IMG/VR virus record: IMGVR_UViG_3300009108_000751
Location: 124,001 to 188,000 of that record
Reading direction: 5' to 3' (one strand)
DNA: 64,000 nt
The notes beneath the pieces were generated by a model. The model saw only the letters and a list, made by a program, of their open reading frames with translations. It had not been told where the DNA came from and searched no databases. This document shows positions 4,960 through 23,211 of this stretch, in pieces. Position numbers and translations under genes: made by a program. How positions within the stretch are numbered: the stretch's first letter is position 1; each line of letters starts with the position of its first letter.

Positions 4960-7900
4960 ATGGCTGAACAGACTTTTAGATCTCCCGGATTCTTTGAGCA
5001 AGAGGTTGACTTAACACAGAGAGTTCAATCACCAACGGGAACTCCGGCAGGAGTAGTTGGTACTGCTCAGAGAGGTCCGGCATTTGTTCCTGTGACCGTC
5101 GGGTCTTTTGTAGATTTCCAGACTAAGTTTGGTAATCTTGATTCCAAAAGATTCGGCCCGTACGCAGTTAACGAATTTCTCAAGAATAGAGATGCTGTTA
5201 CGTACGTGCGCGTTCTCGGCGCCGGCGCAAATGATGAGACAGAAGAAATTAATACTACCCGTGTGCAAGGAAGCGTGAAAAATGCAGGCTTCAAGATCAC
5301 ACCAATTACAACAGATAAAAGGCTCGGTCTTTCTACGACACATATCCTTGCTGCTAAACACCACATTTCTGCATCAGAACAATATGGATTCCCAATTTTC
5401 ACACATAACGATTCATATAATTCATCTGCAGATGCCAATCTGGTAAGAGCAGTTATCTTCACTACAACAGACTCCAGAGTTGGTGTGTTGAGTGCATCTT
5501 TCGATGGCACCGACATGAGCGCTGCTTTTTGTAAGTCAGGCGGAGATGCTCTTGCAACGATCGGAACGTCAGGAGACTTAAAAGACAAGTTCAAGTTGTT
5601 TATCTCCTCATCTGATACTTCATTTGCAACAACCGACGGTCAACCGGGCATGAGGATTCTTACTGCTTCTCTTGATCCGAGGAACAAGAATTACATTAGA
5701 AATATTCTAAATACAGATCCTGCTCAATTCTCAACTCAAAAGCATCTTCTTTATGCTGCATTTGATGTTGAATACTGCCTGGCATCAATTTCTTCTGATG
5801 CTAATTCGGTAGGAATGCTTTCAGGATCAGCCGTGGTCTCTAATGACAATGCGGCAGGTGAAAGCTTCTTGACGGCGTTTGGTAGATACGACACCAGATA
5901 CAACACGCCAAAAACAACAGATTTTATCTCCCAGCCTTTCGGCACAACAGAGTATCCTCTCTTTAGTTTTGAAACTATTGACGACGGTGCCTTTGCTGCA
6001 GGCAAATATAAGATTTCTATAGCAAACATTCGCGGGTCCCTTGACGAGAATAATCCGTACGGAACCTTCACAGTCCAGGTCCGAGCTTACAGTGACAATG
6101 ACAAGTCGAAGGAAGTCTTGGAAGAATACCCACAATGCGATCTTAATCCTAATTCCGAGAAGTTTATAGGGAGAATGATCGGGGATAAAAAAGCATTCTT
6201 TAACTTTGATGCTGAGCTTGAATCAGAGAGAAAAGTAACTGTATCGGGCAAATACCCTAATATGTCAAACGTCGTTCGAGTCGTACTCAGCGACGATGTT
6301 GTCAACGGAAATGTCCCAGCAGAAGCCTTACCTTTTGGTTTCAAGGGAATCCCAGCCCTTAAGACGAATGATAAGCTTGATGACTTTACCTCGCAGGCTG
6401 AAGTCGGATATCGCCTTGGAGGAAGAATTGGCAACGCTGCAACAGCCCTTCTCCAGGCATCGATTCTGCCGCCTGTCCCTTACACGTTTAAGTCGACAAA
6501 CGGAGCAGTTAAAGACGGATCCGTTTTCTTCGTCGGCCAACAGGGAACCCAAGAAACAGTAGACAATAGAATCTACTGGGGTGCTAAAACAACTATGCTT
6601 GCAGCAGACAAGAGCGTCCAAAGTTCAGGTATTACGAACTCTGCCCTTAAGTCAAATGCAGGAACTTCTGTGAACCTAGGTTTAAAAGATCAAGCCAAGT
6701 TCCTCGGCATTTCGAAAATGGATGTGTTGCTGACAGGATCCCAGATCATTCCTGCCAAGGCAGGCGATCGCAAGACATTCAATAACAATAAGTTTACCCT
6801 CGCCCGCGTCGCACTTTCCCGACAGGCAGGACTTTCCGATACAGGGGCTTACACAGATACTGAGATCACAGGAACTATCGGTTCCAACATGCTTGAAGCA
6901 GCATACATTCGTGATGCCTATGTTGATCCCACCACTTACACAGTTTCTGACGGAACAAGGCTTAACAGAATTACATTCGCAACCCTGCTAAACCAGACGT
7001 CTTCTGTAACGTTTAATAAGTTCACGGATTACATGAAGTTTACTAACGTTTTCCACGGCGGATTCGATGGCCTTAACATCTTAGATAAGAACGCTACCAG
7101 AATGAACGATAAGTCGATTTCCCTTGATACGGGTGGTGGCGCTAATTCATCATTTACGTCTCCTGGCATGGCATCGAATATGGCAGGAGCAGGCAAAGAT
7201 AACAATGCCGTTCGATCTTATAGAGCTGCCATCGACGTAATGACAGATAGGTTTGCTTCTAATATTAATATTCTGTCTATTCCAGGCGTGAGAGAAACAT
7301 TTGTAACAGATCATGCAATAGACAAGGTCAAGGATTTTGGGCAAGCCCTCTACTTGATGGATATACCTGAATATGATAGCGACGGAAACAGGCTGTACGA
7401 TGATTCAACAAATCGCCCAAGCGTTTCCAAGACCATCGCGAATTTCGAGGCACGTACTATTGATAGCAATACAACGGCAACGTATTTTCCAGGTGTGATT
7501 ATCACGGATGATAGCAACGGATCAAGCGTTAATGTTCCTCCCTCTATAGCAGCCTTAGCTGCTCTAGGATTTAATGATCGGGTAAGCTTCCCGTGGTTCG
7601 CACCTGCAGGATTCAATCGAGGATCACTTGATTTTGTCCAGAATGTGGATGTTCGACTCTCTGCGGGAGACAGGGATTCGCTTTATGATGCACGAATTAA
7701 TCCTATTGCTACTTTCCCACAGCAAGGATTCGTGATCTTTGGGCAAAAAACCCTGCAGATGGCAAAATCTGCGCTGGATAGAGTTAACGTAAGAAGAATG
7801 CTTCTTGAGGTTAAACGAATAGTTTCGCAAGTGGCAAATGGATTTGTTTTTGAACAGAACACTCCTGCACTAAGAGCTAAATTTATTGCTGATGTATCAC

Positions 7901-8091
7901 CTTTGCTTGCAGTAGTTCAGGCACAGAGTGGGATTGAGCAATTCAAAGTTGTAATGGATGACTCTAACAACACCGCTGACGATATTGAGTCTAATAGGCT
8001 GAATGGACGCATTGTGATTGTCCCGACAAGAAGTATTGAGTTTATATCAATTGACTTCGTCATAACAAATGCCGGCGTAAGCTTTGAGTAG
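4960..8091 (+). CDS. Tail sheath protein 1
   Basis: N-terminal 'SPG...E.D', 'G.A.RGPAF.P'; C-terminal 'PWFAPAG..RG', 'INPI', 'GQKTLQ...ALDRVNVRR', 'PTRSIEFI..DF'. Confidence 0.95.
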   Translation: MAEQTFRSPGFFEQEVDLTQRVQSPTGTPAGVVGTAQRGPAFVPVTVGSFVDFQTKFGNLDSKRFGPYAVNEFLKNRDAVTYVRVLGAGANDETEEINTTRVQGSVKNAGFKITPITTDKRLGLSTTHILAAKHHISASEQYGFPIFTHNDSYNSSADANLVRAVIFTTTDSRVGVLSASFDGTDMSAAFCKSGGDALATIGTSGDLKDKFKLFISSSDTSFATTDGQPGMRILTASLDPRNKNYIRNILNTDPAQFSTQKHLLYAAFDVEYCLASISSDANSVGMLSGSAVVSNDNAAGESFLTAFGRYDTRYNTPKTTDFISQPFGTTEYPLFSFETIDDGAFAAGKYKISIANIRGSLDENNPYGTFTVQVRAYSDNDKSKEVLEEYPQCDLNPNSEKFIGRMIGDKKAFFNFDAELESERKVTVSGKYPNMSNVVRVVLSDDVVNGNVPAEALPFGFKGIPALKTNDKLDDFTSQAEVGYRLGGRIGNAATALLQASILPPVPYTFKSTNGAVKDGSVFFVGQQGTQETVDNRIYWGAKTTMLAADKSVQSSGITNSALKSNAGTSVNLGLKDQAKFLGISKMDVLLTGSQIIPAKAGDRKTFNNNKFTLARVALSRQAGLSDTGAYTDTEITGTIGSNMLEAAYIRDAYVDPTTYTVSDGTRLNRITFATLLNQTSSVTFNKFTDYMKFTNVFHGGFDGLNILDKNATRMNDKSISLDTGGGANSSFTSPGMASNMAGAGKDNNAVRSYRAAIDVMTDRFASNINILSIPGVRETFVTDHAIDKVKDFGQALYLMDIPEYDSDGNRLYDDSTNRPSVSKTIANFEARTIDSNTTATYFPGVIITDDSNGSSVNVPPSIAALAALGFNDRVSFPWFAPAGFNRGSLDFVQNVDVRLSAGDRDSLYDARINPIATFPQQGFVIFGQKTLQMAKSALDRVNVRRMLLEVKRIVSQVANGFVFEQNTPALRAKFIADVSPLLAVVQAQSGIEQFKVVMDDSNNTADDIESNRLNGRIVIVPTRSIEFISIDFVITNAGVSFE

Positions 8092-8127: not shown

Positions 8128-11100
8128 ATGGCCGAACGTACTTTTAAAAGCCCAGGCGTAAGAGCTTTTGAGATCGATAGGTCTGGGCCTACCCCAACCG
8201 GTCCAACGGGCGTTCCAGCAGGCGTAATAGGCACTGCTAAAGAAGGCCCAGCTTTCGTACCGATCACAGTTGCCGACTTCTCCGAATTTGAATCTAAGTT
8301 TGGATTTGTAGGCGGCGATGAGTTCGGACCTATCGCTGCACAAGAATGGCTCAGAAATGCTGGGTCCCTTTCTTATGTGCGAGTACTTGGAGCCGGCAAC
8401 GCGAAGAAAAGGTCTTCAAGCGATGGAACGGTTACGAACGCAGGATTTATCGTAGGCCAGAGATTACCTTTGGATTCTGGGCTTTTAGGAGACAATCCAG
8501 AAGCAAACACCGGCGGAGAAGGAGAAGGAAGAACTTACTTCCTCGGATGCTACATGTCGCAATCCGCAGGATCAACAATCTTCTCCGATGCCGGAATAGG
8601 ATCTGCTCAAAATCTTGGTACCACAGTCGCAGCTTCAGTCCTTCGTGGTGTGCTAATGGCAGCATCAGGTGTCAACCTAAGGCTTTCATGCTCAAATGGT
8701 ACGATGGGCCAGGGAAACACACCAACATCAACAATGACATCATCAATGTCAGGCCAGGGCAACCCATCCGCTGGTTTCTTAACGGGTACAATTAACTTTT
8801 CTAACGGGTCCCCTAAGTTTACCATGCTTTTGCCTGGCCACAAAGGAAAAGATTATCCTCGAGTTCTTACAGCATCTTTAAATCCTGATGACAAAGATTA
8901 CTTTGCAAACATCTTCAATAAAGATCCCCAACAAGTTCAGAAGCACGGCTACGTTCTTTACTCGCATTATGATGTATATCCAGAATATGCCGTCGTGACA
9001 GGTTCGGGAATCTTGGCAACAGGATCAAGCGTTGTGAACGGCGCAGTGTCAGGCTTATACTCAGGAAGCTCTGATGCTGTTTTCCTCCTTACAGGAACTC
9101 AAGGGAGAAACAACGGATCTGCCGCGGCGCCAAACTTCGAAGGATTCCGTGAGAGATTCCAGGCCGCTAAGACGCCATTCATTATCTCACAAGAATTTGG
9201 TGGAACCGCCAAGGATCTCTTCCGAGTGCATCTCTTAAGCGATGGTGTCATGAAGGGCAAATCTTCAGACTCAGTGGGTGCGAACACTAAATACAAGGTT
9301 TCTATTGAGAACGTAGGTAAATCTTCAGATGAACTTAACAAGTTCGGTACGTTCGATCTTGTCTTAAGAGACTTTTACGACAACGATGAGAATACATTCG
9401 TTTATGAGGCCTTCCGCGGCCTTAACCTTGATCCTGCATCGACCAATTACATCGGACGTCGAATTGGCGATACCGACATGTTCTACGATTTTGATCAGGC
9501 ACAGGGATCCCAAAAGCTTGTGATTGACGGAAAGTATGCTAACGTTTCTTCGCGCATAAGAGTTGAAATAGCATCTGATGTTGACAACGGTGAAATCGAT
9601 CCTGAATCTCTGCCCCTAGGGTTTAGAGGTCTAGATCACCTTGTAACCTCTGGATCAAATGTTCTTAGCGCACCTCCAAACGCAAACTTCAGCCTACAGA
9701 GAGACCCAAGCATGACGCTCAAATCAGTTGTGCAACCTCCTGTACCGCTTAGAGAGAACATCGCGATGGGTCTCGCGCCTAAGAAGGTGCCTAATAAGTC
9801 GCTTTACTGGGGCGTCCAATTCACGAAGAAAACCCTCTTAAATGAGCCCAACAAGAGCAGCGTTATTGATCCAAGCATAGTCAGCTTTACGAAATTCTTC
9901 ACTGATCACGCCGTATCTGACTTCAATGTATTGACAGGTTCTAATGCAGGTCAGGCTGATGAAAGCGGCGCAATTCTAGATTGTGATAGGTTTAATAACA
10001 ACAAGTTTACTTTAGAAAACCTGCAGGTCGGTACGGGATCTGATGGTCTTGCATTAACCACGGACGCAGCTCTTGTTAACAGCTGGTCATACGCACGCGA
10101 TGGAAACATCACTACGAATGCTGATGCCAAGACCCGAAGGTTTGAGGTAAACGATACAACAAGCCCGGCGGTTCGAAGGCTCTCTAAGTTTACGATGCCA
10201 TTCCAGGGTGGATTTGATGGATTTAACATCTTTAATAAAAACACCGCCTTGATGAACAACAACGCCGTTAAAGGTGAGATGGATGATTCTAACAGAGGTG
10301 GAATCAACGGCCCGACAGTTGCAGCCTTTAAGAAGGCTCTGGAAGTCATGGGTGAGAAGGCTGATGTTGAGATACAGCTCTTGGCTGTTCCTGGCATTAG
10401 AGAGGCTACCGTCACAAATGATGCTATAACGACTGTAGAGGACAGATTTGATGCACTCTACATCATGGATATCGGCGAGCGTGATAACGTAAACGCAGTG
10501 GTTACTTCCTCTGTGCAAAATGTCAATGTTTCAAATACCGTAGCATCATTCAACGACAGAGCCTTGGATTCATCCTTTGCTGCAGCATATTTCCCAGATG
10601 TTAATATGAACATCCAGGTGAAGACACTGAATCAATCAACGAAGACTGTAGTAGCAAATTCTGCAACAGTTCGGGTTCCGCCGTCAGTTGCAGTTTTAGG
10701 TGCTTTCTCGTTCAACGATGCAGTGGCGTTCCCGTGGTTCGCTCCTGCTGGATTTGCCCGAGGATCTATGAACGCTCTATCTACTGCAGTAAGCCTAAAT
10801 CAAACCAATATGGACGATTTGTACGATAAGGATATCAACCCTATCGTTTCGTTCCCTAATAGTTCTGGCCCGGTAGTTTACGGACAGAAAACTCTGCAAT
10901 CTGCAGCGTCTGCTCTTGACAGAGTCAACGTAAGAAGGCTCTTGATCGACGTAAGGCGCTCAGTTAAGCAAGTTGCACAGCAACTTATCTTCGAGCCTAA
11001 TAGAGAATCAACCCTTCAAAGATTCACTGCTTTGGTAACTCCAATCTTGAAGAGAGTTCAGGAAAACCAAGGTGTTGATCGATTTAGAGTTGTTATTGAT

Positions 11101-11232
11101 TCTAGCACAACTACGCAGGCAGACATTGAAAACAATACAGTTCGAGGGAAGATCTTCTTGCAGCCTACACGAACAGCAGAATTCATCTCGCTTGATTTCG
11201 TGGTAACAAATTCAGGAGTTGATGGACTTTAA
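8128..11232 (+). CDS. Tail sheath protein 2
   Basis: Same sheath motifs (SPGV, PWFAPAG, GQKTLQ, DRVNVRRLL, PTRTAEFI). Confidence 0.95.
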   Translation: MAERTFKSPGVRAFEIDRSGPTPTGPTGVPAGVIGTAKEGPAFVPITVADFSEFESKFGFVGGDEFGPIAAQEWLRNAGSLSYVRVLGAGNAKKRSSSDGTVTNAGFIVGQRLPLDSGLLGDNPEANTGGEGEGRTYFLGCYMSQSAGSTIFSDAGIGSAQNLGTTVAASVLRGVLMAASGVNLRLSCSNGTMGQGNTPTSTMTSSMSGQGNPSAGFLTGTINFSNGSPKFTMLLPGHKGKDYPRVLTASLNPDDKDYFANIFNKDPQQVQKHGYVLYSHYDVYPEYAVVTGSGILATGSSVVNGAVSGLYSGSSDAVFLLTGTQGRNNGSAAAPNFEGFRERFQAAKTPFIISQEFGGTAKDLFRVHLLSDGVMKGKSSDSVGANTKYKVSIENVGKSSDELNKFGTFDLVLRDFYDNDENTFVYEAFRGLNLDPASTNYIGRRIGDTDMFYDFDQAQGSQKLVIDGKYANVSSRIRVEIASDVDNGEIDPESLPLGFRGLDHLVTSGSNVLSAPPNANFSLQRDPSMTLKSVVQPPVPLRENIAMGLAPKKVPNKSLYWGVQFTKKTLLNEPNKSSVIDPSIVSFTKFFTDHAVSDFNVLTGSNAGQADESGAILDCDRFNNNKFTLENLQVGTGSDGLALTTDAALVNSWSYARDGNITTNADAKTRRFEVNDTTSPAVRRLSKFTMPFQGGFDGFNIFNKNTALMNNNAVKGEMDDSNRGGINGPTVAAFKKALEVMGEKADVEIQLLAVPGIREATVTNDAITTVEDRFDALYIMDIGERDNVNAVVTSSVQNVNVSNTVASFNDRALDSSFAAAYFPDVNMNIQVKTLNQSTKTVVANSATVRVPPSVAVLGAFSFNDAVAFPWFAPAGFARGSMNALSTAVSLNQTNMDDLYDKDINPIVSFPNSSGPVVYGQKTLQSAASALDRVNVRRLLIDVRRSVKQVAQQLIFEPNRESTLQRFTALVTPILKRVQENQGVDRFRVVIDSSTTTQADIENNTVRGKIFLQPTRTAEFISLDFVVTNSGVDGL

Positions 11233-11286: not shown

Positions 11287-11775
11287 ATGGCTGAGACCCT
11301 TTCTGTTGCTGAGATGCTTCCAAATAAATTTGAACCTAAGCGCCAGTTTAGGTGGGTATTTGCAATTGAAGGCATTGATGCCTTCTTGATGAAGTCAGCC
11401 GCAAGACCTACAATTTCCACTGAGTCTGTAACGCTTCCTTTTATTAATCACACTCGCTATCTTGCTGGTCGAACAACATTCGGCGACATGTCCGTGACGC
11501 TTTACGATCCAATCGCACCTTCCGGTGCGCAGCAGGTCATGGAGTGGATTAGAACTCATTTTGAATCTGTTTCTGGCCGAGCAGGCTACGCAGATTTTTA
11601 CAAGCGTGATTGCCAGATCAAGATGCTTGACCCAATTGGAACAGTTGTTGAGCTTTGGGACGTCAAAGGCGCGTTTATCACAAACGCTGAGTATGGATCT
11701 TTGAGCTATGACACTAACGATGCCGCAGAGATTTCCATGACTCTTCGCTTTGACAACTGCGTGCTTCAATACTGA
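11287..11775 (+). CDS. Tail tube protein (gp19-like)
   Basis: 162 aa after the sheaths; 'EPKRQFRW', 'Y.AGR..F..M.VTLYD', 'W...GAF.....G.L.Y'. Confidence 0.9.
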   Translation: MAETLSVAEMLPNKFEPKRQFRWVFAIEGIDAFLMKSAARPTISTESVTLPFINHTRYLAGRTTFGDMSVTLYDPIAPSGAQQVMEWIRTHFESVSGRAGYADFYKRDCQIKMLDPIGTVVELWDVKGAFITNAEYGSLSYDTNDAAEISMTLRFDNCVLQY

Positions 11776-11867: not shown

Positions 11868-12707
11868 ATGTCTAGAAATGACGTATTTAGCGCTGCAAGC
11901 GCATCAGACCCCAGAGTGGCGGAAACATTAGAGCAGGCACAGCAGGATCTTGGATTCGATATCCCGATCGAGACTGTCCCTTTGCCTTCGCTAGGCAAGG
12001 CATATCCTCCGGATCACCCGCTGCATCTTAAAAACTCAGTTGACATTCGAGCGATGACAGCGAGAGAAGAAGATATCTTAACATCCAGAGCCTTTATTAA
12101 AAATGGTACTGTAATTACTAATCTGATTCGATCTTGCTTAACAGATAAGTCAATAGATCCGAGAACGCTCCTGTCAGGTGATCGAAACGCAATTCTTGTT
12201 GCCATTAGGATTACTGGCTACGGCGCAGATTATCATACTAATGTTACTTGCCCTGTATGCGGAACAGCTCAAGTGCATTCTTGCGCTCTGTCCGACTTGC
12301 CAATCAGGTCGCTTGAGTCAGACCCAGTTACTCCCGGGAGAAATGAGTTTGAAGTTGTCCTCCCGGTGTCAGGTAAGAAAGTGACCCTATCTTTCCCGAC
12401 AGGCTTGGACGAGGAAGAAGCACTAACTATCTCGGAGAGAAAACGAAAACAGGGGATCGTAGTAGATAATCTCGTTACAGAGAGGCTCTTTAGAGCTATT
12501 ACTTCCATCCAGGGTAATACAGACAAGTCTTACATCAGCAAGTTTATCCGCAACATGCCCGCTAGGGATTCCTTAGAAATCAGGAGGTTCCTAGAGAAAA
12601 GCGAGCCTACCGTTAACATGGTGACACTCTTCGCATGCGAAGCTTGTGAGCTGCAGGAGGAAATGCCCCTACCCATGGGGGCAAACTTTTTTTGGCCTGA
12701 AACCTGA
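11868..12707 (+). CDS. Tail assembly chaperone / baseplate-hub assembly protein (gp26-like, two CxxC motifs)
   Basis: 'LPS.G..Y', 'MTAREEDIL', 'GDRNAIL..IR...YG', CPVC and CEAC, ends 'FFWP'; between tube and tape measure. Confidence 0.75.
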   Translation: MSRNDVFSAASASDPRVAETLEQAQQDLGFDIPIETVPLPSLGKAYPPDHPLHLKNSVDIRAMTAREEDILTSRAFIKNGTVITNLIRSCLTDKSIDPRTLLSGDRNAILVAIRITGYGADYHTNVTCPVCGTAQVHSCALSDLPIRSLESDPVTPGRNEFEVVLPVSGKKVTLSFPTGLDEEEALTISERKRKQGIVVDNLVTERLFRAITSIQGNTDKSYISKFIRNMPARDSLEIRRFLEKSEPTVNMVTLFACEACELQEEMPLPMGANFFWPET

Positions 12708-12957
12708 GGATCGTGAGCTTTTCTTAGAACAGGCATTTTTGCTTATGTACTATGGGGGCTTCACGTATTCTGAGGCATATAAGATTCCTACTCGTTACCG
12801 CGTTTGGTTCATAGATAGAATCAATAAAGAGTTTAAAAAAGCCGCAGGGACGGGAAATGAGTCATCCCGTGCATCACACAATAATGATCCAGGAAGCAGA
12901 GCTATGAGGGGTATGTCGCGACAAACAGGCCCGTCTAGGACAAGAAGATTCACTTAG
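12688..12957 (+). CDS. Frameshift extension of the tail chaperone (G/GT-like; gp51-like segment)
   Basis: +1 frame reads 'FFGLKPEDRE..LEQAFLLMYYGGFTYSEAY.IP..YR.WFI.R' and is entered at the T7 run 12687-12693; no SD for an independent start. Confidence 0.6.
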   Translation, partial: FFGLKPEDRELFLEQAFLLMYYGGFTYSEAYKIPTRYRVWFIDRINKEFKKAAGTGNESSRASHNNDPGSRAMRGMSRQTGPSRTRRFT

Positions 12958-12989: not shown

Positions 12990-15152
12990 ATGGCCACCAA
13001 AGAACAAATAGAATTACAAAAGCAGCTCATCAGACTGGCTGAAGAATATGAGACTATTCTGCAGCGCATCCAAAGCGGAGAGATAAAAGGCAGAGTAGAA
13101 ATAGAGGATGCTTACAAGCGTTTTTCTAAGCTCCAGAGAAAGGCGCAAGATGAGAGCAAGACTGATTACTCAAAGTTTCTCAAAGAAAATCCCAGGGTAA
13201 GAGACTCCTTTAACGAACTCAGCAAAGCGCAACAAAAAGCAACCGCGACATCGGATTCCTTGGGCAGAGGAATGAAAGGCCTAATGACCCAATTCGGCCC
13301 GGCAGGTCTTGGCATGGTCCTGGGCGGATCTGCTCTAGGGCTCACAAAACTCACTGGTGTTCTTAGAAAGGTCTCCGAGGGCTTTGACGGACTGTCCAAG
13401 CCTATCTTGATGTCTCGTGAGGCGATCACAAACGAGTTCGGGCAAGCTATAAACGACCAGGGTGAGTTGATGACTAACTTCGCCGGCGACGCCGCGAGGT
13501 CTCAAGAAAACCTTATGAATGAGCTTGCAAAGACCCCGCGGGGCCTTGCAGCAGCTGACCCTTACATGCGCAGCTTCTCTCAGAACTTTGCCAAAGCCCA
13601 GCAAGAACTTGTGCAACGGACCGCGAAGATGCGCCATGCCGTTGGCACTGAGATGGAGTTTTTGCAAGCCGCCTTTCGGTCTGACGCTAGCGTCAAGCAG
13701 ATAGATGAACTGCGATTAGCTTTGGGTATGCAGGAAGAAGACCTGGCCTCAGTTGCAGCGCAGGCGCAGATAGGCGGAACTACTCTAGTCAGGCAAATGG
13801 CAGTCTCTGCAGAAGCAACTGACAAGATGAGTAAAAGGTATGGTGTGAATTTTGGGCTTGTCAGAAAAGCTACAAACGCTCTTCGAAAAGACTTCGGCAC
13901 TTTCGGTACTTTTAGCGAGCAGCAGCTGGCAAAAGTTGCAGCCCAAGCAGTTAAGCTAGGCGTCTCTCTTGACGGCATCAAGAAGCTGACGATTCACGAT
14001 AGCTTTGATACTGCAGCAGAGAAAGCCGCGATGCTCGGCCAGTCCTTCGGTATGAATATCGACGCTTTTGACCTCTTTATGGAAGAAGATCCCGCTGAGC
14101 GCCTTCGAATGATCCAAGAGGCTGCTGAGCAAGCCGGGGTCGATGTCGCAAACATGTCACGTGTCGAGATGAAACACCTAGCTGATCTTACCGGCATGGA
14201 CGTCAAGGATACCATGAAAGCCCTGAGCGATTCCGGCCAGAACCTTCGAAGCCAGCTGGGTGTTGCAGAAGAAGGCAAGGTTGCGGCAGAAGATCGAGTG
14301 GCACAAAATAATCGAATGATAAGTGTCCAGGCTCGTTTAGCTGATATTATGGAGAAGGTTGCGCCTAATATCGCAACAATAGGTACTGATACCGGCGCAG
14401 ACATTGCCAAGGGCCAGCTTGAACTACTTGCTGCCCAAGGAAATACTTTCCAGAAAATGGGCAATGCACAAATCAACGCCGCGGCAGCCCTTACTAAAGC
14501 ATCCGGAAAATTAATTACTTTAAATCCTCTCATTCAAGAGCTGGCGAAAAATATGGGTGATTTCGCGTCTCGAAAGCTTGTGGGAGAGGGAACCAAGGCG
14601 ATCACCGGCGGCCTCGCCGCAACGGATGACATGCTCAAAAAGGTCCAGGCCCAGCGGGAAGCCGGCGGAGGTCTTAGGGACGAAGCGTTCTTGAAGTCCC
14701 TGGGAGATAAGAAGCAACAGGCCTTTGCCCTCCAGATCATTAAGGTGTTTGACACAATAGGGAACCAGGCCATCCAGACTGCAAAAAAAGCTGCAGATGC
14801 AATGTCTGCGAAAAAACCCCTTGCAGGTACAGCGGAAAACCCGAGTCACGTCACCCTACCTACACCACTTCCCGTAAAGATAGAACCCGGAACTATCCAA
14901 CAACCTCAGGCTGCAGCACGTCAAACTGCCACCGCGAATGTTCCAGTAACCGCAGACGGAGGAAAATTAAAGGCAGGAACACCCCAAGTTTCAAGCCCCA
15001 TACCTATTGACTTAACTGTGAATCTCCTCGCCAGTAATGACGTGCTTGCTACAGCCACTGCAAATGGAACCCCTGATGGGCAAGCTGCTCCCATAGGAAC
15101 CCAACTAAACAACGGTAACCGTGCTGCGAAGGCGGTGGGCGTTAGCGCTTGA
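12990..15152 (+). CDS. Tape measure protein
   Basis: Ala/Gln/Lys-rich helical 720 aa after the chaperone; 'QA.KLG.SL', 'LA..TGM.V' repeats. Confidence 0.7.
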   Translation: MATKEQIELQKQLIRLAEEYETILQRIQSGEIKGRVEIEDAYKRFSKLQRKAQDESKTDYSKFLKENPRVRDSFNELSKAQQKATATSDSLGRGMKGLMTQFGPAGLGMVLGGSALGLTKLTGVLRKVSEGFDGLSKPILMSREAITNEFGQAINDQGELMTNFAGDAARSQENLMNELAKTPRGLAAADPYMRSFSQNFAKAQQELVQRTAKMRHAVGTEMEFLQAAFRSDASVKQIDELRLALGMQEEDLASVAAQAQIGGTTLVRQMAVSAEATDKMSKRYGVNFGLVRKATNALRKDFGTFGTFSEQQLAKVAAQAVKLGVSLDGIKKLTIHDSFDTAAEKAAMLGQSFGMNIDAFDLFMEEDPAERLRMIQEAAEQAGVDVANMSRVEMKHLADLTGMDVKDTMKALSDSGQNLRSQLGVAEEGKVAAEDRVAQNNRMISVQARLADIMEKVAPNIATIGTDTGADIAKGQLELLAAQGNTFQKMGNAQINAAAALTKASGKLITLNPLIQELAKNMGDFASRKLVGEGTKAITGGLAATDDMLKKVQAQREAGGGLRDEAFLKSLGDKKQQAFALQIIKVFDTIGNQAIQTAKKAADAMSAKKPLAGTAENPSHVTLPTPLPVKIEPGTIQQPQAAARQTATANVPVTADGGKLKAGTPQVSSPIPIDLTVNLLASNDVLATATANGTPDGQAAPIGTQLNNGNRAAKAVGVSA

Positions 15153-15165
15153 TAGGGAGTAGAAG

Positions 15166-15387
15166 TTGTCCAAGAAGATACCTATAAAGGCGCAGCAGTG
15201 GAGTCCTGCTCACGATGAGATCATGAACTCTCCAGAGATTACGAGAATCTTACGAGAACTACCTGAAGAGAGCAGGGCTCAAGTTGAGAAGCACCTTCGA
15301 GATTATGTATCTGTCCTCGGCGGCGTGATCACGACTATGAGCAACTTCAAAACCGCGGCCCAGCAGCAGGAGGACAAAGATGGCTGA
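15166..15387 (+). CDS. Hypothetical protein
   Basis: SD gggag upstream, fills the gap and overlaps the next start. Confidence 0.55.
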   Translation: MSKKIPIKAQQWSPAHDEIMNSPEITRILRELPEESRAQVEKHLRDYVSVLGGVITTMSNFKTAAQQQEDKDG

Positions 15388-18300
15388 TGATACAAAAAAG
15401 GTCCTTATACCCAAGGATAGAAATGGTGATGACCAGCTGGGTAATGACTTCACAGCTGCCAATGCCAACTATGCCGCGCTGCCGGGCTTTGGGAACGCAG
15501 GCCAAGATGATCTGCCACTAGAATCTCCCCAGCCTCTAGACAACGTACAGCAGGTAAGCTTAGGTTCTGCAAGGCAAAAGGTTTTAGATGACACCAGAAT
15601 TAATCCTCGTCAACCTGGCGTAACTGATACGCTTGATTCGACATCACAGTTTCTACCAGATGAGCTTGCGCACTCCACAGTGGACAGACCGAGCACGCTT
15701 ACGTTGGGCAGCATGTTCAACAAGGGCTTGCCTGGAATTAGGAAGTCACCCGCTGTCCCACGAGCCGGCGATGCACTAAGAGATATCAGCACTGATTCGC
15801 AGTCTTTGGATCCGCAAAACGCGCCACAGGGTCGAACAGTGGCCGGAACTCCGGGGCCCGCATACGGCAACCCCGATGAACAATCCGGCGCCGGCCCAGT
15901 TGTGCAGCGCACAGTATCAGCAGTGCTCACTAGAAATCGCTTTGCTGGCATGCACAAAAGAGTTTATGCTCCGGCCAACTCAAACCCCGATGATCAAGTC
16001 GTTGGCTCTTTTCAATCTCAGGTAGGAGCTTACGATTCTGAGGCTCCCACGAATGAGCCGACTCAAGCAGGATATGCCTTCACCCTTGAGGATCTTAAGG
16101 GCACAGCCGCTCAATTAATCAGTCAAGCTGCAGGGTTTTCTACCCAGAGCAGAGAGACAAATCAAGATCAGCGATATGCTAGTGAAGGTGTCGCAGTCTC
16201 TTCTGTTCGCCCTAGGAATCTCCAGGAGGGCGATATTACCAATGATGCCTTCATCAAGTCTAAAGCATCCACGGGAGAGTTTGATGAGCCCAATGACGGA
16301 GAGCCAATAGAAACTTTCGGACAGCTTAACACCCCAGATTCACCTTACGCTGGAATGAATCCAGTCCAGATGAAAAGTCTTGCAGATGCTATTATTGCTG
16401 CGACAGTGCTGGCTTTGGATACGGGTGCAGAGAGATCTTTTATAGATCTGCTCACTTCTAATGCAAGTCAAGGATCTGCCCCGGGTAGCCGACCCTACAC
16501 TAAGGGCAAGTTCATCGAGAATAATACATGGGGCAAACCCGCTCTTAGGTCTGACTTAGGGTTCGCACACACTTCTTTCCCTTATGACAAGGCAATTGAT
16601 GCGGGTAAGTCTTTAGTCTTTGGAATTGAGGACACTGCGATAGCTACGTCTGACATTGGTGAAAGAGCTAATCTTACTGGAAACGCCCGGGCGACCAGGG
16701 GTAATATAGCTAATAATCCCGGATTTTATGTTGTTTTCTGCAGGGCGGTCTTAAGAGACTCGCAGAATCTTCGGCAGAAGTTTGCAGAATTAGGATCCAT
16801 AGCCTCGGGCGCCTCGCAGGAATCATTAGTCGCATCAGCAACGCTAGTTGAATCTTTTAGATCTTCAAAACTAGTTGCTTGCATGAACGTCTTGGCGATG
16901 ACGGGAGATTCTATTTTATCCCGGGCCCAAAGCCCATACAAAGTTGACCAAATAAAGTCCTCAGGGGACCCAGCGTTCTCTGCATTTGGTAGACCCTTAG
17001 AAGTGGGCAAAATACATTACAGGCCTTCTTCTCACGCTATGAAAAGCAGAGATAGCGAAATTGAACCAGGTGTAAGCCCAGCTTCTATGCGTCTTGCCTG
17101 GAGGAATGCTTCTGTCCCCAGCATGTACTTGCTACCTGCAGAGATCGAGTATGGGAGTGTCCAGAACGCCCTTTCTACTCTTAGTAATGATTCACCAGCA
17201 GGTGCACACATCAGCATGGAGGGTATTACGAAAGCTGAGTCTAACGGCCGCCTGCCACAAGAGTTTGTCGAAAATCACGAGCGAACCCTCGACGCTGAAT
17301 ACGTTCCCTTCTATTTTCACGACCTTCGCACAGGAGAGATAATAGCTTTTCACGCTTTCTTAGACAACCTAAGCGATAGTTTCTCAGCACGCTATAACGG
17401 TCAAAAAGCAATTGGTAGAGCAGAGGAAGTCCAGATTTATGACTCAACTTCAAGAGATATCGGATTTTCTTTCTACGTTGCTGCAACATCCCGTGAAGAT
17501 TTTAATGAGATGTGGTTTAAGATCAATAAGCTCGTAACGATGCTCTACCCACAATACACGCAGGGAAGAGGTACAGGAGATCAATCTTTCCAGCCAAAGA
17601 GAAATCCCATTGATTTCCTGGCAGGGCTTTCCGGTGAAAACTTCATTATGCCGTTCTCGCAAGTCCAATCGGCATCTCCAATGATCCGCCTCCGGATTGG
17701 CGATGTTGTGAAAACTAACTTTTCTAAGTTTAACCTGTCTCGCCTGTTTGGGCTAGGGACTGAGCAGTTTTCTCCTGTCCCGGGTGCTTCGATAGCAAAC
17801 GCAGCTACTCTGAATATCATGCGACTTCTTTTCCAAGGATTGGGACTTTTGCACAATAATCGAGGCTCTTCAGCTGGGGCTCAAGCCGGATCAAGCGCAG
17901 TTCTTTCATCACCAGCAACTTCAATTAACTTCTTAGAGATAATGAGGCTTCTTCGGCAAAGAGCACGCCAAAAACCTGAGGGTGTAGGTACGTTCTGGAG
18001 CAGAAGAAGCGGACTTAAAATAGGGGATGTAGTGAGAATTAGCTTTCCAAGCGTGAGGACTCTTAATAGAGTTGACGGTTCCGGAAAGCTGTTTATTCCT
18101 TTTAAAGATGTGTATGCTAAGATTGTAACTGATCCCGTCAATAAAGATGGCGAGCTTTCGATTGATCCGAACGGAGATGTCTTCTACAAGGTGCAAGTTG
18201 CATCTTCAGCAGACATGGCCCGACTTGGAATTTATGACGTCGGTGGCGACGCGACGTACTTGATGAATCATCATGATGCATCGCTGATACCCATGGGCCT

Positions 18301-18793
18301 ATTCAAGGAGTTCGCGGCTGTTAATGTCGTGAGAATTGTAGCAGGCACCGGTGCTTACCTCGCAGGCGCTTTCTCAAGCCAGCTCTTTCTCTCTAACTTT
18401 AATAATGCAGTTGCTAGATCGTTCGATCAATCCAGCGGCAAGGGTCTTCCTGGATTTATCACACAGATGTCATTTGACTGGATTGGGAACGATGTAACGT
18501 GGGAAGTTGATCAAGGAGCAAGAGCGCCCAAGCTCGCAAAGATAACGTGCCGATTTAAACCTGTTCACGACATTGCTCCTGGTATTGATCACTTGGGCTA
18601 TAACAGAGCACCAGTATACCCAGTAGGCGATGTGATGAACGATATCGTCGGAACCTCAGGTGATATACTAGATTCCCAGCTAGCTCAAGCAGCTGGTGAT
18701 GCTATCGCGCATGGGACGTCAGTCGGGGTTAACGGAGCCACTGATGGCTTAACCAAGGATATCTTGGGAATGAAGCTCGGAGATGAGTCATGA
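15380..18793 (+). CDS. Large baseplate / tube-initiator-like structural protein
   Basis: Tube-fold-like segment 'F.AFL..LSDSFS..Y......GR.E....Y..TSR.I.FSF' and C-terminal 'GFI..MSFDW...WE...G.RAP'; synteny. Confidence 0.55.
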   Translation: MADDTKKVLIPKDRNGDDQLGNDFTAANANYAALPGFGNAGQDDLPLESPQPLDNVQQVSLGSARQKVLDDTRINPRQPGVTDTLDSTSQFLPDELAHSTVDRPSTLTLGSMFNKGLPGIRKSPAVPRAGDALRDISTDSQSLDPQNAPQGRTVAGTPGPAYGNPDEQSGAGPVVQRTVSAVLTRNRFAGMHKRVYAPANSNPDDQVVGSFQSQVGAYDSEAPTNEPTQAGYAFTLEDLKGTAAQLISQAAGFSTQSRETNQDQRYASEGVAVSSVRPRNLQEGDITNDAFIKSKASTGEFDEPNDGEPIETFGQLNTPDSPYAGMNPVQMKSLADAIIAATVLALDTGAERSFIDLLTSNASQGSAPGSRPYTKGKFIENNTWGKPALRSDLGFAHTSFPYDKAIDAGKSLVFGIEDTAIATSDIGERANLTGNARATRGNIANNPGFYVVFCRAVLRDSQNLRQKFAELGSIASGASQESLVASATLVESFRSSKLVACMNVLAMTGDSILSRAQSPYKVDQIKSSGDPAFSAFGRPLEVGKIHYRPSSHAMKSRDSEIEPGVSPASMRLAWRNASVPSMYLLPAEIEYGSVQNALSTLSNDSPAGAHISMEGITKAESNGRLPQEFVENHERTLDAEYVPFYFHDLRTGEIIAFHAFLDNLSDSFSARYNGQKAIGRAEEVQIYDSTSRDIGFSFYVAATSREDFNEMWFKINKLVTMLYPQYTQGRGTGDQSFQPKRNPIDFLAGLSGENFIMPFSQVQSASPMIRLRIGDVVKTNFSKFNLSRLFGLGTEQFSPVPGASIANAATLNIMRLLFQGLGLLHNNRGSSAGAQAGSSAVLSSPATSINFLEIMRLLRQRARQKPEGVGTFWSRRSGLKIGDVVRISFPSVRTLNRVDGSGKLFIPFKDVYAKIVTDPVNKDGELSIDPNGDVFYKVQVASSADMARLGIYDVGGDATYLMNHHDASLIPMGLFKEFAAVNVVRIVAGTGAYLAGAFSSQLFLSNFNNAVARSFDQSSGKGLPGFITQMSFDWIGNDVTWEVDQGARAPKLAKITCRFKPVHDIAPGIDHLGYNRAPVYPVGDVMNDIVGTSGDILDSQLAQAAGDAIAHGTSVGVNGATDGLTKDILGMKLGDES

Positions 18794-22020: not shown

Positions 22021-23211
22021 GTGAAAGTTTGCATCAACCAGAGTATCCTAGGATCCGAACAGCACCTAGTAACTGATTTTAAGTCAGGTGCATCTTGGGT
22101 TAATGAGCCACCCGAAGATGCACTTACGGTGGGATTCAGTGACAGCGAAGAGCTTCAAGTAATATCACGCCTTTCAGGAATCTCAATACCCCGCCACCCC
22201 GACCCTAAGTTTGCAGGCCCTTTTAAGACATTTGGAATTAAAAATATACTCTGGTCGCAAGCTTTGCCTAGGAGTGTGTACAAGAAGTACTTTCAGAATA
22301 TCCAGGATGCTATCAGATTGAACGCGGACTCTGATCAATACGATTACTTTAAAGAGAGGGTTTCAAGGCAACAGAAGCTAATCTCGTCATTGCAGCCTGC
22401 CCACATCGATGAAAAGATCTTTGCTCGAAGGTACGGAGATCCTGCTACTGTTAATAAGTCGGTCTTGACTTCCTTCATGCCTATGAAGGGTGTGACTAAG
22501 AAAGTAGGCTACAATCTTACCGGCACCAACACAGGACGACTCACGATATCAGAAGGCCCCCAGATTCTTACGCTTAAGGCGGAGATGAGGGATATCTTGA
22601 CCTCTCGCTATGAAGGGGGAAAGATCATGCAGTTCGATTACGTAAGCCTGGAGCCTCGCGTTGCACTCATCCTCTCCGGCCAGGATCCTATCAAAGATAT
22701 CTACACTGACCTCTGCGACAAAGTTCTGGACAGCCAGCACGGTCGACAAACTGCAAAGTTGCTGACCATTGCCACGCTGTATGGCATGGGTGTTCGCCGG
22801 GTCAAAGAGTTGATCGGGGTGAGCAAGCACACAGCGCTGGATGTTCTCAAGAATCTGGAGATCTTCTTCGGGGTGGGTGAGGTAAAAGCTCACTTGGAGG
22901 AAGAAGCAAAGTCTGGTTTTATCAAGAATCACTTTGGTAGAAACATCCGAGTTCGCAATAATGCGTCACACGTGCTCTACAACAACTATATACAATCCTC
23001 AGCGATGGATGCAGCACTCGAAGGCTTTTATCAGATTGTGCAAGGTGTAGAGAAGGAAGGCCACAAGTGTGTTCCGCTCTTTCTTTTGCATGATGCGATT
23101 ATTTTTGACTGCCACCCTGAGTGCTTTGACAAGCTTGAGGATATAATGGCACCAGGGCAACAAATACCTGCTTTTAAATCGCGGCTCTACATGGGCGCGG
23201 AGGAACTATAA
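22021..23211 (+). CDS. Minimal family-A DNA polymerase-like protein (no exonuclease domain)
   Basis: 'TGRL', motif A 'DYVSLEPR', motif B 'RQTAK....TLYGMG', 'NYIQS', motif C 'LHDA'. Confidence 0.8.
   Translation: MKVCINQSILGSEQHLVTDFKSGASWVNEPPEDALTVGFSDSEELQVISRLSGISIPRHPDPKFAGPFKTFGIKNILWSQALPRSVYKKYFQNIQDAIRLNADSDQYDYFKERVSRQQKLISSLQPAHIDEKIFARRYGDPATVNKSVLTSFMPMKGVTKKVGYNLTGTNTGRLTISEGPQILTLKAEMRDILTSRYEGGKIMQFDYVSLEPRVALILSGQDPIKDIYTDLCDKVLDSQHGRQTAKLLTIATLYGMGVRRVKELIGVSKHTALDVLKNLEIFFGVGEVKAHLEEEAKSGFIKNHFGRNIRVRNNASHVLYNNYIQSSAMDAALEGFYQIVQGVEKEGHKCVPLFLLHDAIIFDCHPECFDKLEDIMAPGQQIPAFKSRLYMGAEEL

What the first reader, a model, noticed from the sequence alone, without database searches (positions are those of the whole stretch)
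12675..12957. Programmed +1 (or -2) frameshift in the tail assembly chaperone
Seen: 11868 ends AAC TTT TTT TGG CCT GAA ACC TGA (NFFWPET). Slipping on the T7 run (12687-12693) enters the +1 frame (FFGLKPEDRE...), open to 12957 just before the tape measure gene, with no SD-linked start of its own. Known: lambda G/GT uses -1 and Mu uses -2 frameshifts at this genomic position. Inference: a G/GT-type pair joining gp26-like and gp51-like segments through an uncommon shift direction.
Basis: partly seen in the sequence, partly recalled or inferred. Interest (0 to 1): 0.62.

Follow-up and report, generated by a model that had tools for sequence, protein, structure and literature searches.

The report
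Plus-one frameshift in phage tail chaperone
A marine jumbo-phage gene of the T4 gp26/gp51 family, lying between the tail-tube and tape-measure genes, makes a short and a long protein through a conserved +1 ribosomal slip on UUU-UGG, and relatives that lack the slip carry two separate genes instead, as T4 does, which suggests why T4 seemed to lack the usual tail-chaperone frameshift.

Summary
ORF1 (11868-12707, 279 aa) ends AAC TTT TTT TGG CCT GAA ACC TGA. The T7 run is at 12687-12693, and the +1 frame is open to 12957, 33 nt before the putative tape-measure gene.

ORF1 belongs to Pfam PF12322, the family of both T4 gp26 and T4 gp51. Its predicted fold best matches the three solved tail assembly chaperones.

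In 92 related viral loci (79 distinct contexts) the core TTY YTT TGG CCT is invariant, wobble bases included, and the +1 frame stays open for 150-280 nt. The +1 product is conserved as protein from the first codon after the T-run. In 26 of 71 loci no start codon is available for it.

Natural controls fit. Three relatives carry tandem short and in-frame long paralogs, joined exactly where the shift is predicted. Two others encode the extension as a separate gene. All five have lost the exact motif.

Interrupted T-runs (TTTCTTT, TTCTTTT) argue against a -2 shift and against transcriptional slippage. Independent assemblies show no indel.

Best reading: a programmed +1 ribosomal frameshift at Y-UUU-GG-C, with a P-site like that of prfB, giving a G/GT-like chaperone pair. 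T4 gp26 and gp51 look like the two-gene version. I found no published description. It is a new variant of a known kind.

The parts
11868..12707 (+). ORF1, the short form (279 aa). It is a gp26/gp51-family protein (PF12322) with two CxxC pairs, and is the predicted tail assembly chaperone. It ends ..GANFFWPET*.
   Evidence: PF12322 at E 2.2e-15 and phrog_150. AF2 model pLDDT 87.8. The top three of 48,161 PDB representatives are the solved tail assembly chaperones 3fgx (Z 6.4), 2ob9 (Z 6.0) and 3klu (Z 5.8); excluding rank 4 (5ir0, Z 4.7, which matches a different domain), the next chain scores 3.4.
12687..12698 (+). Shift site TTT TTT TGG CCT. The proposed event is that peptidyl-tRNA on UUU (12690-12692) re-pairs to UUU (12691-12693), so that GGC (12694-12696) is read instead of UGG.
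   Evidence: The core TTY YTT TGG CCT is invariant in 79 distinct contexts, wobble bases included, while upstream wobble positions carry 1.8-1.96 bits of entropy. +1-frame stops one to two codons upstream bound the shift window in L043 and in L104-L112.
12694..12957 (+). +1-frame extension: 87 codons plus a stop, GLKPEDRE...RRFT*. It is the T-like C-terminal domain of the long form.
   Evidence: Conserved as protein in 68 non-redundant relatives. Codon-position differences are 0.30/0.26/0.56 for the first 17 codons. 1078 clusters match its profile. In the model of an in-frame homologue it forms helices followed by a disordered tail.
11868..12957 (+). The long form (362 aa): ORF1 codons 1-275 joined to the extension, with base 12693 skipped.
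   Evidence: The model P0003 aligns end to end, with no gap at the junction, with the natural in-frame protein L067-B (39% identity, E 6e-83).
11287..11775 (+). Tail tube gene (gp19 family), directly upstream.
   Evidence: PF06841 and phrog_4542.
12990..15152 (+). Putative tape measure protein (720 aa), directly downstream.
   Evidence: Assigned from its position, which matches the annotated tape-measure genes of immuto, LIS04, HSE3 and SP-15, and from a weak BLASTP match to the immuto tape measure (E 0.004). It has no family hit.
8128..11232 (+). Tail sheath gene (context).
   Evidence: phrog_23 and PF17482.

Best explanation
ORF1 is the tail assembly chaperone of a T4-type contractile tail. 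Most ribosomes read it to the TGA at 12705 and make the 279-aa short form.

A minority shift +1 on the run U UUU UUU GG. With peptidyl-tRNA-Phe on UUU (12690-12692) in the P site and the Trp codon UGG waiting in the A site, the tRNA re-pairs one base downstream to UUU. GGC (Gly) is then read, and translation continues for 87 codons to 12957. The result is a 362-aa long form with the junction ..ANFF-GLKPEDRE...

The P-site options seen in relatives are UUU_U in most and CUU_U in some. These are the same two options known for the +1 shift in bacterial release factor 2 genes. The incoming +1 codon, GGC, is the one used by yeast Ty1.

By analogy with lambda G/GT, the shared N-terminal chaperone domain would coat the tape measure protein. 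The extension would recruit a tail component, and neither form would stay in the virion.

The need for two products is met in two other ways in relatives. Some carry tandem short and in-frame long paralogs, and some encode the extension as a free-standing gene. T4 gp26 (short) and gp51 (long) look like the two-gene version.

Shown: the coding and conservation of both frames, the bounds of the shift window, the in-frame natural fusions, and the chaperone-like fold. Inferred: the ribosomal mechanism, the exact P-site codon, the ratio of the two products, their binding partners, and the equivalence with T4.
For: 1. Family and position. ORF1 is PF12322 / phrog_150, and lies between the tube gene and the putative tape-measure gene. 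The same order (sheath, tube, PF12322 gene, 200-280 nt without a long called gene, tape measure) is found in Mel-JY01, immuto, LIS04, HSE3, SP-15 and BRock.

2. The +1 frame. In all seven cultured or assembled distant phages the +1 frame, and only that frame, fills the gap and encodes a related peptide.

3. The motif. In 92 viral-contig loci (79 distinct contexts) the site is TTTTTTT (56), TTTCTTT (12) or TTCTTTT (11), followed by invariant GG CCT, whereas neighbouring wobble positions are nearly random.

4. Bounds on the shift. +1-frame stops lie directly upstream of the run in L043 and L104-L112, and 0-frame stops lie 2-5 codons after TGG, so the shift must occur within a few codons.

5. No start of its own. 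The 17 codons after the junction vary as coding sequence in the +1 frame (0.30/0.26/0.56, against 0.36/0.26/0.62 for ORF1). 26 of 71 loci have no ATG, GTG or TTG available there, and 62 of 71 have no ATG.

6. Natural fusions. L067-B, P0016 and ten further proteins of 306-354 aa carry PF12322 plus the extension in one frame, with junctions such as ..FFGI.. and ..MFGLNPE... The modelled long form aligns with L067-B at E 6e-83.

7. Controls. The short paralogs in L067, L125 and L126, and the loci with a separate extension gene (L113, L120), read TTT TTC TGG CCA, GAA TTC TGG ATG, TTC TTG TAT CCT and TTC CTT TGG CCA. The exact motif is kept only where the +1 extension overlaps.

8. Fold. Models of ORF1 and of L067-B both have the three solved tail assembly chaperones as their top three hits. 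Their identity as chaperones is stated in PMC9603447.

9. No indel at the run in independent assemblies.

10. T4. gp26 and gp51 are both PF12322, and gp51 has about 48 extra C-terminal residues. A profile of natural long forms aligns to T4-like gp51 through to its last residue (probability 86%, E 4.8e-6). The T4 tail review lists gp26 and gp51 as hub assembly chaperones and says gp51 is required for assembly but absent from the particle (PMC3004832).
Against: There is no direct evidence of the protein products: no mass spectrometry, ribosome profiling or reporter data. The single RNA contig that reaches the site ends two bases after the run.

UGG is not a classically slow codon. No conserved stimulator was found, neither an SD-like element at prfB-like spacing nor a conserved downstream structure. 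Efficiency is therefore unknown and could be low.

The invariance of TGG CCT is also explained by double coding (FFWP in frame 0, GL in frame +1), so it does not by itself identify the A-site codon.

The exact P-site codon is unresolved. In the TTT CTT TGG variants the slip could be on UUU_C (product FFGL) or on CUU_U (product FLGL). Distant phages use UUU_C followed by other A-site codons.

Homology of the extension to the gp51 tail is not significant when tested alone (E 0.25; hmmsearch not significant).

The structural Z scores (5.5-6.4) lie below the level the tool regards as safe on their own. The binding partners are inferred only by analogy.
Confidence: 0.85

Rival explanations
1. A -2 ribosomal frameshift on the T7 run, as reported for phage Mu. 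It would reach the same frame but add one extra residue.
For: The window's own run of seven T would allow -2 re-pairing. -2 frameshifting is on record for Mu tail genes (PMC5009743).
Against: 23 of 79 distinct contexts have TTT CTT TGG or TTC TTT TGG. There a tRNA moved back by two bases would face TTC/GCT or TCT, with mismatches, whereas +1 re-pairing stays perfect or prfB-like. Distant phages (TTC TTT CGT, CTG TTT CGC, TTT CTA) offer no -2 site. Natural in-frame fusions read FF-G/S, with no extra residue.
Confidence: 0.04
2. Transcriptional slippage. RNA polymerase drops one U, or adds two, on the T7 run, and ribosomes then read the edited mRNA straight through.
For: Homopolymer runs of seven or more are known slippage sites in bacteria (PMC5009743). 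The majority variant is T7 (56 of 79 contexts).
Against: The arrangement is just as well conserved where the run is broken into T3CT3 or T2CT4 (23 of 79 contexts), and in distant phages whose runs are only 3-6 T long. Such runs are too short for efficient polymerase slippage. No length variant appears in any contig, although contigs cannot show rare variants.
Confidence: 0.05
3. The extension is an independent small gene, started at GTG 12646 or ATG 12745, as in relatives L113 and L120. No recoding would be involved.
For: Two relatives do encode the domain as a free-standing protein with its own ATG. Gene callers often call fragments starting at the conserved Met, which is profile position 18 in many hits.
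Against: In those two relatives the gene sits in a different frame, after the ORF1 stop, and carries an extra N-terminal segment. In the window's clade, 26 of 71 loci have no ATG, GTG or TTG before or within the first 17 conserved codons, and 62 of 71 have no ATG. Those 17 codons are under coding selection. In L043 and L104-L112 the +1 frame opens only 1-2 codons before the run. No SD-like sequence precedes ATG 12745.
Confidence: 0.04
4. An artefact or a decaying gene: an assembly indel in a homopolymer, or a recently frameshifted pseudogene of an originally in-frame long form.
For: Homopolymers are error-prone, and in-frame long forms do exist.
Against: Independent assemblies from other studies agree base for base at the run. 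The same frame arrangement recurs in 92 loci at 46-88% identity and in seven distant phages. Both frames are under purifying selection.
Confidence: 0.01

Closest known systems
Lambda gpG / gpGT tail assembly chaperone pair (-1 frameshift), and the conserved G-T arrangement of long-tailed phages
   Same: Both lie between the major tail (tube) gene and the tape-measure gene. Both make a short product and a C-terminally extended product from a shift a few codons before the stop, and the second ORF has no start of its own. The N-terminal domain has a chaperone-like fold.
   Different: The direction is +1, not -1. The shift site is a single-tRNA P-site slip (Y UUU GG) rather than a tandem X_XXY_YYZ heptamer. 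The chaperone domain is about 250 aa, carries a four-Cys zinc-ribbon-like element and belongs to PF12322, not to any named chaperone family. Binding partners and product ratio have not been tested.
T4 gp26 and gp51 (hub assembly chaperones)
   Same: They belong to the same Pfam family as ORF1. gp26 stops three residues after the ..EFF motif, just as the short form stops after ..NFFWPET. gp51 continues for about 48 residues and aligns collinearly with the long form. gp51 is needed for assembly but absent from virions (PMC3004832).
   Different: In T4 these are two separate, divergently transcribed genes, with no overlap and no frameshift. They lie next to hub genes rather than between the tube and tape-measure genes. 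Homology of the gp51 tail with the extension is suggestive, not proven.
Bacterial release factor 2 (prfB) +1 frameshift, CUU_UGA_C
   Same: The P-site codon is CUU, or in a minority of species UUU, re-pairing to UUU one base downstream (PMC5009743). Here it is UUU_UGG_C in 67 of 79 contexts and CUU_UGG_C in 12 of 79.
   Different: The A-site codon is the sense codon UGG, not a stop. There is no SD-like stimulator three bases upstream and no autoregulatory logic. The shift here yields a second product rather than the only functional one.
Yeast Ty1 +1 frameshift, CUU_AGG_C
   Same: A P-site slip in which the incoming +1-frame codon is GGC (PMC5009743).
   Different: Ty1 is eukaryotic and depends on a rare Arg tRNA. 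Nothing comparable is shown here for Trp.
Haloarchaeal myovirus HSTV-2 tail assembly chaperone (likely +1) and phage Mu (-2)
   Same: Both are precedents for tail-chaperone pairs that reach the +1 frame.
   Different: The HSTV-2 chaperone has no PF12322 match, so it belongs to a different protein family. Mu is reported as -2.

Membership tests
Pfam PF12322 T4_baseplate (T4 gp26/gp51 family) | A match to the family profile above its gathering score | tested here: met
   ORF1 scores 57.4 bits against a cut-off of 24.5, covering profile positions 14-219. T4 gp26 scores 215.6 bits and gp51 177.5 bits against the same model. phrog_150 'baseplate hub' matches at E 3.8e-19.
Pfam PF12322 T4_baseplate (T4 gp26/gp51 family) | Two conserved Cys pairs, and a C-terminal aromatic motif (..FF..) at the end of the domain | tested here: met
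   C128, C131, C257 and C260 are nearly invariant. The ends compared are ..NFFWPET in the window..KEFFELL in gp26 and ..VDVFKLL.. in gp51.
G/GT-type tail assembly chaperone pair | The gene lies between the major tail/tube gene and the tape-measure gene | tested here: met
   Tube gene 11287-11775, ORF1 11868-12707, extension to 12957, putative tape measure from 12990. The order is the same in six annotated phages. The window's tape-measure identity rests on position and a weak match.
G/GT-type tail assembly chaperone pair | A second ORF that overlaps the 3' end of the first, has no start of its own and is conserved as protein | tested here: met
G/GT-type tail assembly chaperone pair | A conserved slippery sequence inside the overlap | tested here: met
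   TTY YTT TGG CCT is invariant in 79 contexts. The exact motif is absent from all five loci that do not need it, and the YTT TGG core from four of them.
G/GT-type tail assembly chaperone pair | The classical shift is -1 on an X_XXY_YYZ heptamer | tested here: not met
   The extension is in the +1 frame in all 92 loci, and the -1 (+2) frame is closed. This is therefore a variant of the classical pair, not a standard member.
G/GT-type tail assembly chaperone pair | The fold of solved tail assembly chaperones (HK97 gp13 2ob9, YqbN 3klu, Rbstp2171 3fgx) | tested here: met
   These three are ranks 1-3 of 48,161 chains for both models. Z scores are 5.5-6.4, covering 83-98 residues of chains 96-119 residues long. 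For ORF1, rank 4 (5ir0, Z 4.7) matches a different domain and rank 5 scores 3.4. The Z values are moderate. Foldseek alone found nothing significant.
G/GT-type tail assembly chaperone pair | The short and long products are both made in a fixed ratio, are both needed for tail assembly, and are absent from virions | not testable with these tools
   This needs protein analysis and genetics. The only indirect support is that T4 gp51 is essential for assembly and absent from the particle (PMC3004832).
G/GT-type tail assembly chaperone pair | The common domain binds the tape measure, and the extension binds the tail tube protein | not testable with these tools
   This needs pull-down or co-expression experiments. 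It is inferred here only by analogy with lambda (PMC5009743).
prfB-type +1 P-site slip | A P-site codon CUU or UUU followed by U, allowing re-pairing to UUU | tested here: met
   UUU_U in 67 and CUU_U in 12 of 79 contexts. The RF2 sites are described in PMC5009743.
prfB-type +1 P-site slip | A stop codon in the A site, and an SD-like stimulator three bases upstream | tested here: not met
   The A-site codon is UGG. The upstream codons vary freely at wobble positions, and no SD-like block lies at that spacing. The site resembles the prfB shift site but is not a member of that regulatory system.

The most novel reading that the evidence does not exclude
PF12322 (gp26/gp51), still annotated as 'baseplate hub', is the tail assembly chaperone family of T4-type contractile tails. 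Its ancestral or commonest mode of expression would be a +1 programmed frameshift at Y-UUU-GG-C, found in over a thousand 50%-identity protein clusters of mostly marine phages. T4, long cited as the exception that lacks G-T frameshifting, would instead have replaced the frameshift with two paralogous genes: 26 for the short form and 51 for the long form. This would define one of the largest families of +1 frameshifting on a sense codon in bacterial systems, and would assign a function to two T4 genes that are not understood.
Probability: 0.55. Interest if true: 0.8.

Novelty: new variant of a known kind. Interest (0 to 1): 0.7.

Why it matters
Frameshift-linked tail assembly chaperone pairs are a hallmark of long-tailed phages. 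The standard review states that they are conserved 'except T4' (PMC5009743). This locus and its relatives supply the missing link, in three steps:
- The T4 gp26/gp51 family sits in the chaperone position between the tube and tape-measure genes.
- It has a chaperone-like fold.
- It makes its two forms either by a +1 slip or by gene duplication.

Several consequences follow. The roles of T4 gp26 and gp51 become directly testable. Hundreds of orphan 50-130-aa ORFs in marine phage genomes, and the label 'baseplate hub', would need re-annotation. The set also offers a large natural series of +1 shift sites on a sense A-site codon (UUU_UGG_C and CUU_UGG_C), with built-in evolutionary controls. That is useful for studying how +1 frameshifting works without a stop codon, a rare codon or a known stimulator.

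Tried and rejected
- tblastn of the extension against 50,697 phage records found no match. The cultured relatives were found only through ORF1.
- A word-index search with the fused model, scored on residues 272-345, gave 9 candidates and none significant. The full profile search was needed.
- Modelling the shift with the four-letter words TTTT=F and AACT=N produced wrong frames, because those words recur in frame. TGGC=G gave the intended model. This is a device to write out the shifted product, not a claim that the phage uses another genetic code.
- The extension-only profile against the C-terminal 62 residues of gp51 was not significant by hhalign (E 0.25; global score negative) or by hmmsearch. 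Only full-length profiles align through the tail.
- Complex prediction with the tube protein and the extension returned 'no answer'. It is evidence neither for nor against binding.
- A PDB sequence search and Foldseek against the PDB found nothing significant.
- Search for an RNA stimulator. The window's own 80 nt downstream fold well (-28.5 kcal/mol, z -3.8), but 40 relatives average z -0.44, and the alignment of 30 sequences gives no consensus pair. No conserved SD-like block lies upstream.
- A search for relatives of the SP-15 protein in viral contigs returned only SP-15 itself.
- The HSTV-2 +1 chaperone was checked as a possible member of the family and is not PF12322.
- Seven literature searches found no paper that describes a frameshift in a gp26/gp51-family gene or calls that family a tail assembly chaperone. 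The library lacks most subscription journals, so prior description cannot be excluded.
- The window encodes no tRNA genes.

Full report
**What is in the window**

The window is a 64-kb piece of a 78-kb IMG/VR virus record. CheckV estimates the record is about 25% complete, so it is a fragment of a jumbo phage. It occurs in marine metagenomes from at least a dozen studies.

The finding sits inside a tail module. In order, the module holds:
- two tandem sheath genes (4960-8091 and 8128-11232);
- a gp19-family tube gene (11287-11775);
- ORF1 (11868-12707);
- a 250-nt stretch with no long frame-0 ORF;
- a 720-aa gene (12990-15152) in the position of the tape measure.

ORF1 ends AAC TTT TTT TGG CCT GAA ACC TGA, with seven T at 12687-12693. 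The +1 frame reads ..FFGLKPEDRE.. and stays open to 12957. The motif TTTTTTTGG alone is no rarer than chance, with 1 match found and 1.05 expected. The case rests on position and conservation.

**What ORF1 is**

ORF1 matches Pfam PF12322 'T4_baseplate' and phrog_150 'baseplate hub'. T4 gp26 (208 aa) and T4 gp51 (249 aa) both match the same model along its full length. gp26 ends three residues after an ..EFF motif, while gp51 runs on for about 48 residues.

AlphaFold models were built for ORF1 (pLDDT 87.8) and for a natural long homologue (pLDDT 85.5). Both were compared with 48,161 PDB representatives. In both searches ranks 1-3 were 3fgx, 2ob9 and 3klu, with Z scores of 5.5-6.4 covering 83-98 residues of chains 96-119 residues long. 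For ORF1, rank 4 (5ir0, Z 4.7) matches a different domain and rank 5 scores 3.4. These three entries are the solved phage tail assembly chaperones (PMC9603447). The Z values are moderate and Foldseek alone saw nothing. Even so, having the only three such structures at the top in two separate searches is hard to put down to chance.

**The second frame is a conserved protein, joined at the T-run**

Seven distant phages have the same gene order: Mel-JY01, immuto, an uncultured 484-kb phage, LIS04, HSE3, SP-15 and BRock. In each, the +1 frame alone fills the gap before the tape-measure gene, and it encodes a related peptide.

Scans of IMG/VR returned at least 599 relatives. Of the 99 loci fetched, 92 have the +1 extension. 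The +1 product is conserved from its first residue, with the consensus GLTPxDKExxLExxFLLMYYxGFSYxExYNxP...RRFT.

The 17 codons between the junction and the first conserved Met differ at codon positions 1/2/3 by 0.30/0.26/0.56. That pattern is the same as for ORF1 in its own frame. In 26 of 71 loci there is no ATG, GTG or TTG that could start this segment.

In L043 and in clade L104-L112, a +1-frame stop lies one or two codons before the run. The frame-0 stop follows 2-5 codons after TGG. The change of frame must therefore happen within the run.

**The site**

Across 79 distinct contexts the sequence is TTT TTT TGG CCT (56), TTT CTT TGG CCT (12) or TTC TTT TGG CCT (11). The last eight bases are invariant, while wobble positions just upstream carry 1.8-1.96 bits of entropy.

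The only codon that can re-pair +1 in all three variants is the one before TGG, either UUU_U or CUU_U. These are exactly the two P-site options recorded for the +1 shift of release factor 2 genes. The incoming +1 codon, GGC, is the one used at the Ty1 site (PMC5009743).

A more general rule also fits, and it covers the distant phages as well: a frame-0 UUU followed by U or C. Examples are TTT TTT CAC, TTC TTT CGT, CTG TTT CGC and TTT CTA. I cannot decide between these two readings for the TTT CTT variants.

A -2 shift and transcriptional slippage both need the long homopolymer, and the interrupted runs argue against them. No conserved RNA structure or SD-like stimulator was found.

**Natural controls**

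A profile of the extension alone hits 1078 clusters in 1.8 billion representative proteins. Most hits are orphan ORFs of 50-130 aa. At least 12 of the best 150 are proteins of 306-354 aa in which PF12322 and the extension are in one frame, joined at ..FFGI.. or ..MFGLNPE... The modelled 362-aa product of the window aligns with one of them end to end and without a gap at the junction (E 6e-83).

The genomic contexts are informative. L067, L125 and L126 carry a short paralog directly followed by the in-frame long paralog. In those short paralogs the site reads TTT TTC TGG CCA or GAA TTC TGG ATG.

In L113 and L120 the extension is a separate gene with its own ATG, in another frame. There the site reads TTC TTG TAT CCT or TTC CTT TGG CCA.

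So the exact motif is kept only where a shift is needed. The need for two products is met in three interchangeable ways.

**T4**

The review of recoding states that G-T frameshifting is conserved in long-tailed phages 'except T4' (PMC5009743). The T4 tail review lists gp26 and gp51 as hub assembly chaperones, and notes that gp51 is required for assembly but absent from the particle (PMC3004832).

A profile of the natural long forms aligns with T4-like gp51 from the first Cys pair to the last residue of gp51 (probability 86%, E 4.8e-6). The extension tested alone is not significant.

I read gp26 and gp51 as the two-gene equivalent of the short and long forms. I put this at about 0.6, lower than the frameshift itself at about 0.85.

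**Artefact check**

Contigs from independent studies cross the run with no indel. In the same call, contigs of more distant phages aligned only to 12655-12713, the block around the site.

**Limits**

No protein-level or ribosome-level data exist. The efficiency of the shift, the exact P-site codon in some variants, and the binding partners are all inferred. The literature library is incomplete, so 'not described' means not found in seven searches.

The four-letter word used only writes out the shifted product. No alternative genetic code is proposed.

Noticed in passing
window 4960-8091 and 8128-11232: Two tandem tail-sheath paralogs (1043 and 1034 aa). Both match phrog_23 and other sheath families, mainly through their C-terminal parts, and both are about twice the usual sheath length.
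   Followed up: no
L067:120-2075; L125:3121-4999; L126:2-1053: These relatives have replaced the frameshift with tandem short and in-frame long PF12322 paralogs, a T4-like gp26/gp51 arrangement. In L125 the pair lies next to an RNA ligase gene rather than next to tube and tape-measure genes.
   Followed up: partly
L113:1632-1949; L120:1623-1910: In two relatives the extension domain is a free-standing gene with its own ATG and an extra N-terminal segment (MENIDNLL..), placed in the other frame directly after the ORF1 stop.
   Followed up: partly
window 12697-12776: In this phage only, the 80 nt after the shift site fold into a long imperfect hairpin (-28.5 kcal/mol, z -3.8). The structure is not conserved in relatives (mean z -0.44; no consensus pairs).
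   Followed up: yes
window 12655-12713: Contigs of other, more divergent marine phages aligned to the window only over this 59-nt block around the shift site. It is therefore the most conserved nucleotide stretch of the region.
   Followed up: partly
window ORF1 residues 158-253 (about 12339-12626): The second half of ORF1 gives its best structural match (Z 4.7, 89 of 103 residues) to ORF19 of a Vibrio cholerae PICI-like element (5ir0), a protein of unknown function. The match recurs with the L067-B model.
   Followed up: no
window 15166-15387 and 15380-18793: A 73-aa ORF and an 1137-aa ORF follow the putative tape measure, overlapping by 8 nt. Neither has any Pfam or PHROG match. Replication and recombination genes begin at 22021: a DNA polymerase fragment, an SSB and a UvsX-like recombinase.
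   Followed up: no
L008:5803-6090 (T4 gene 26'): The T4 record annotates an internal in-frame start in gene 26, giving a 95-aa C-terminal product (26'). T4 may therefore make three PF12322-derived products.
   Followed up: no
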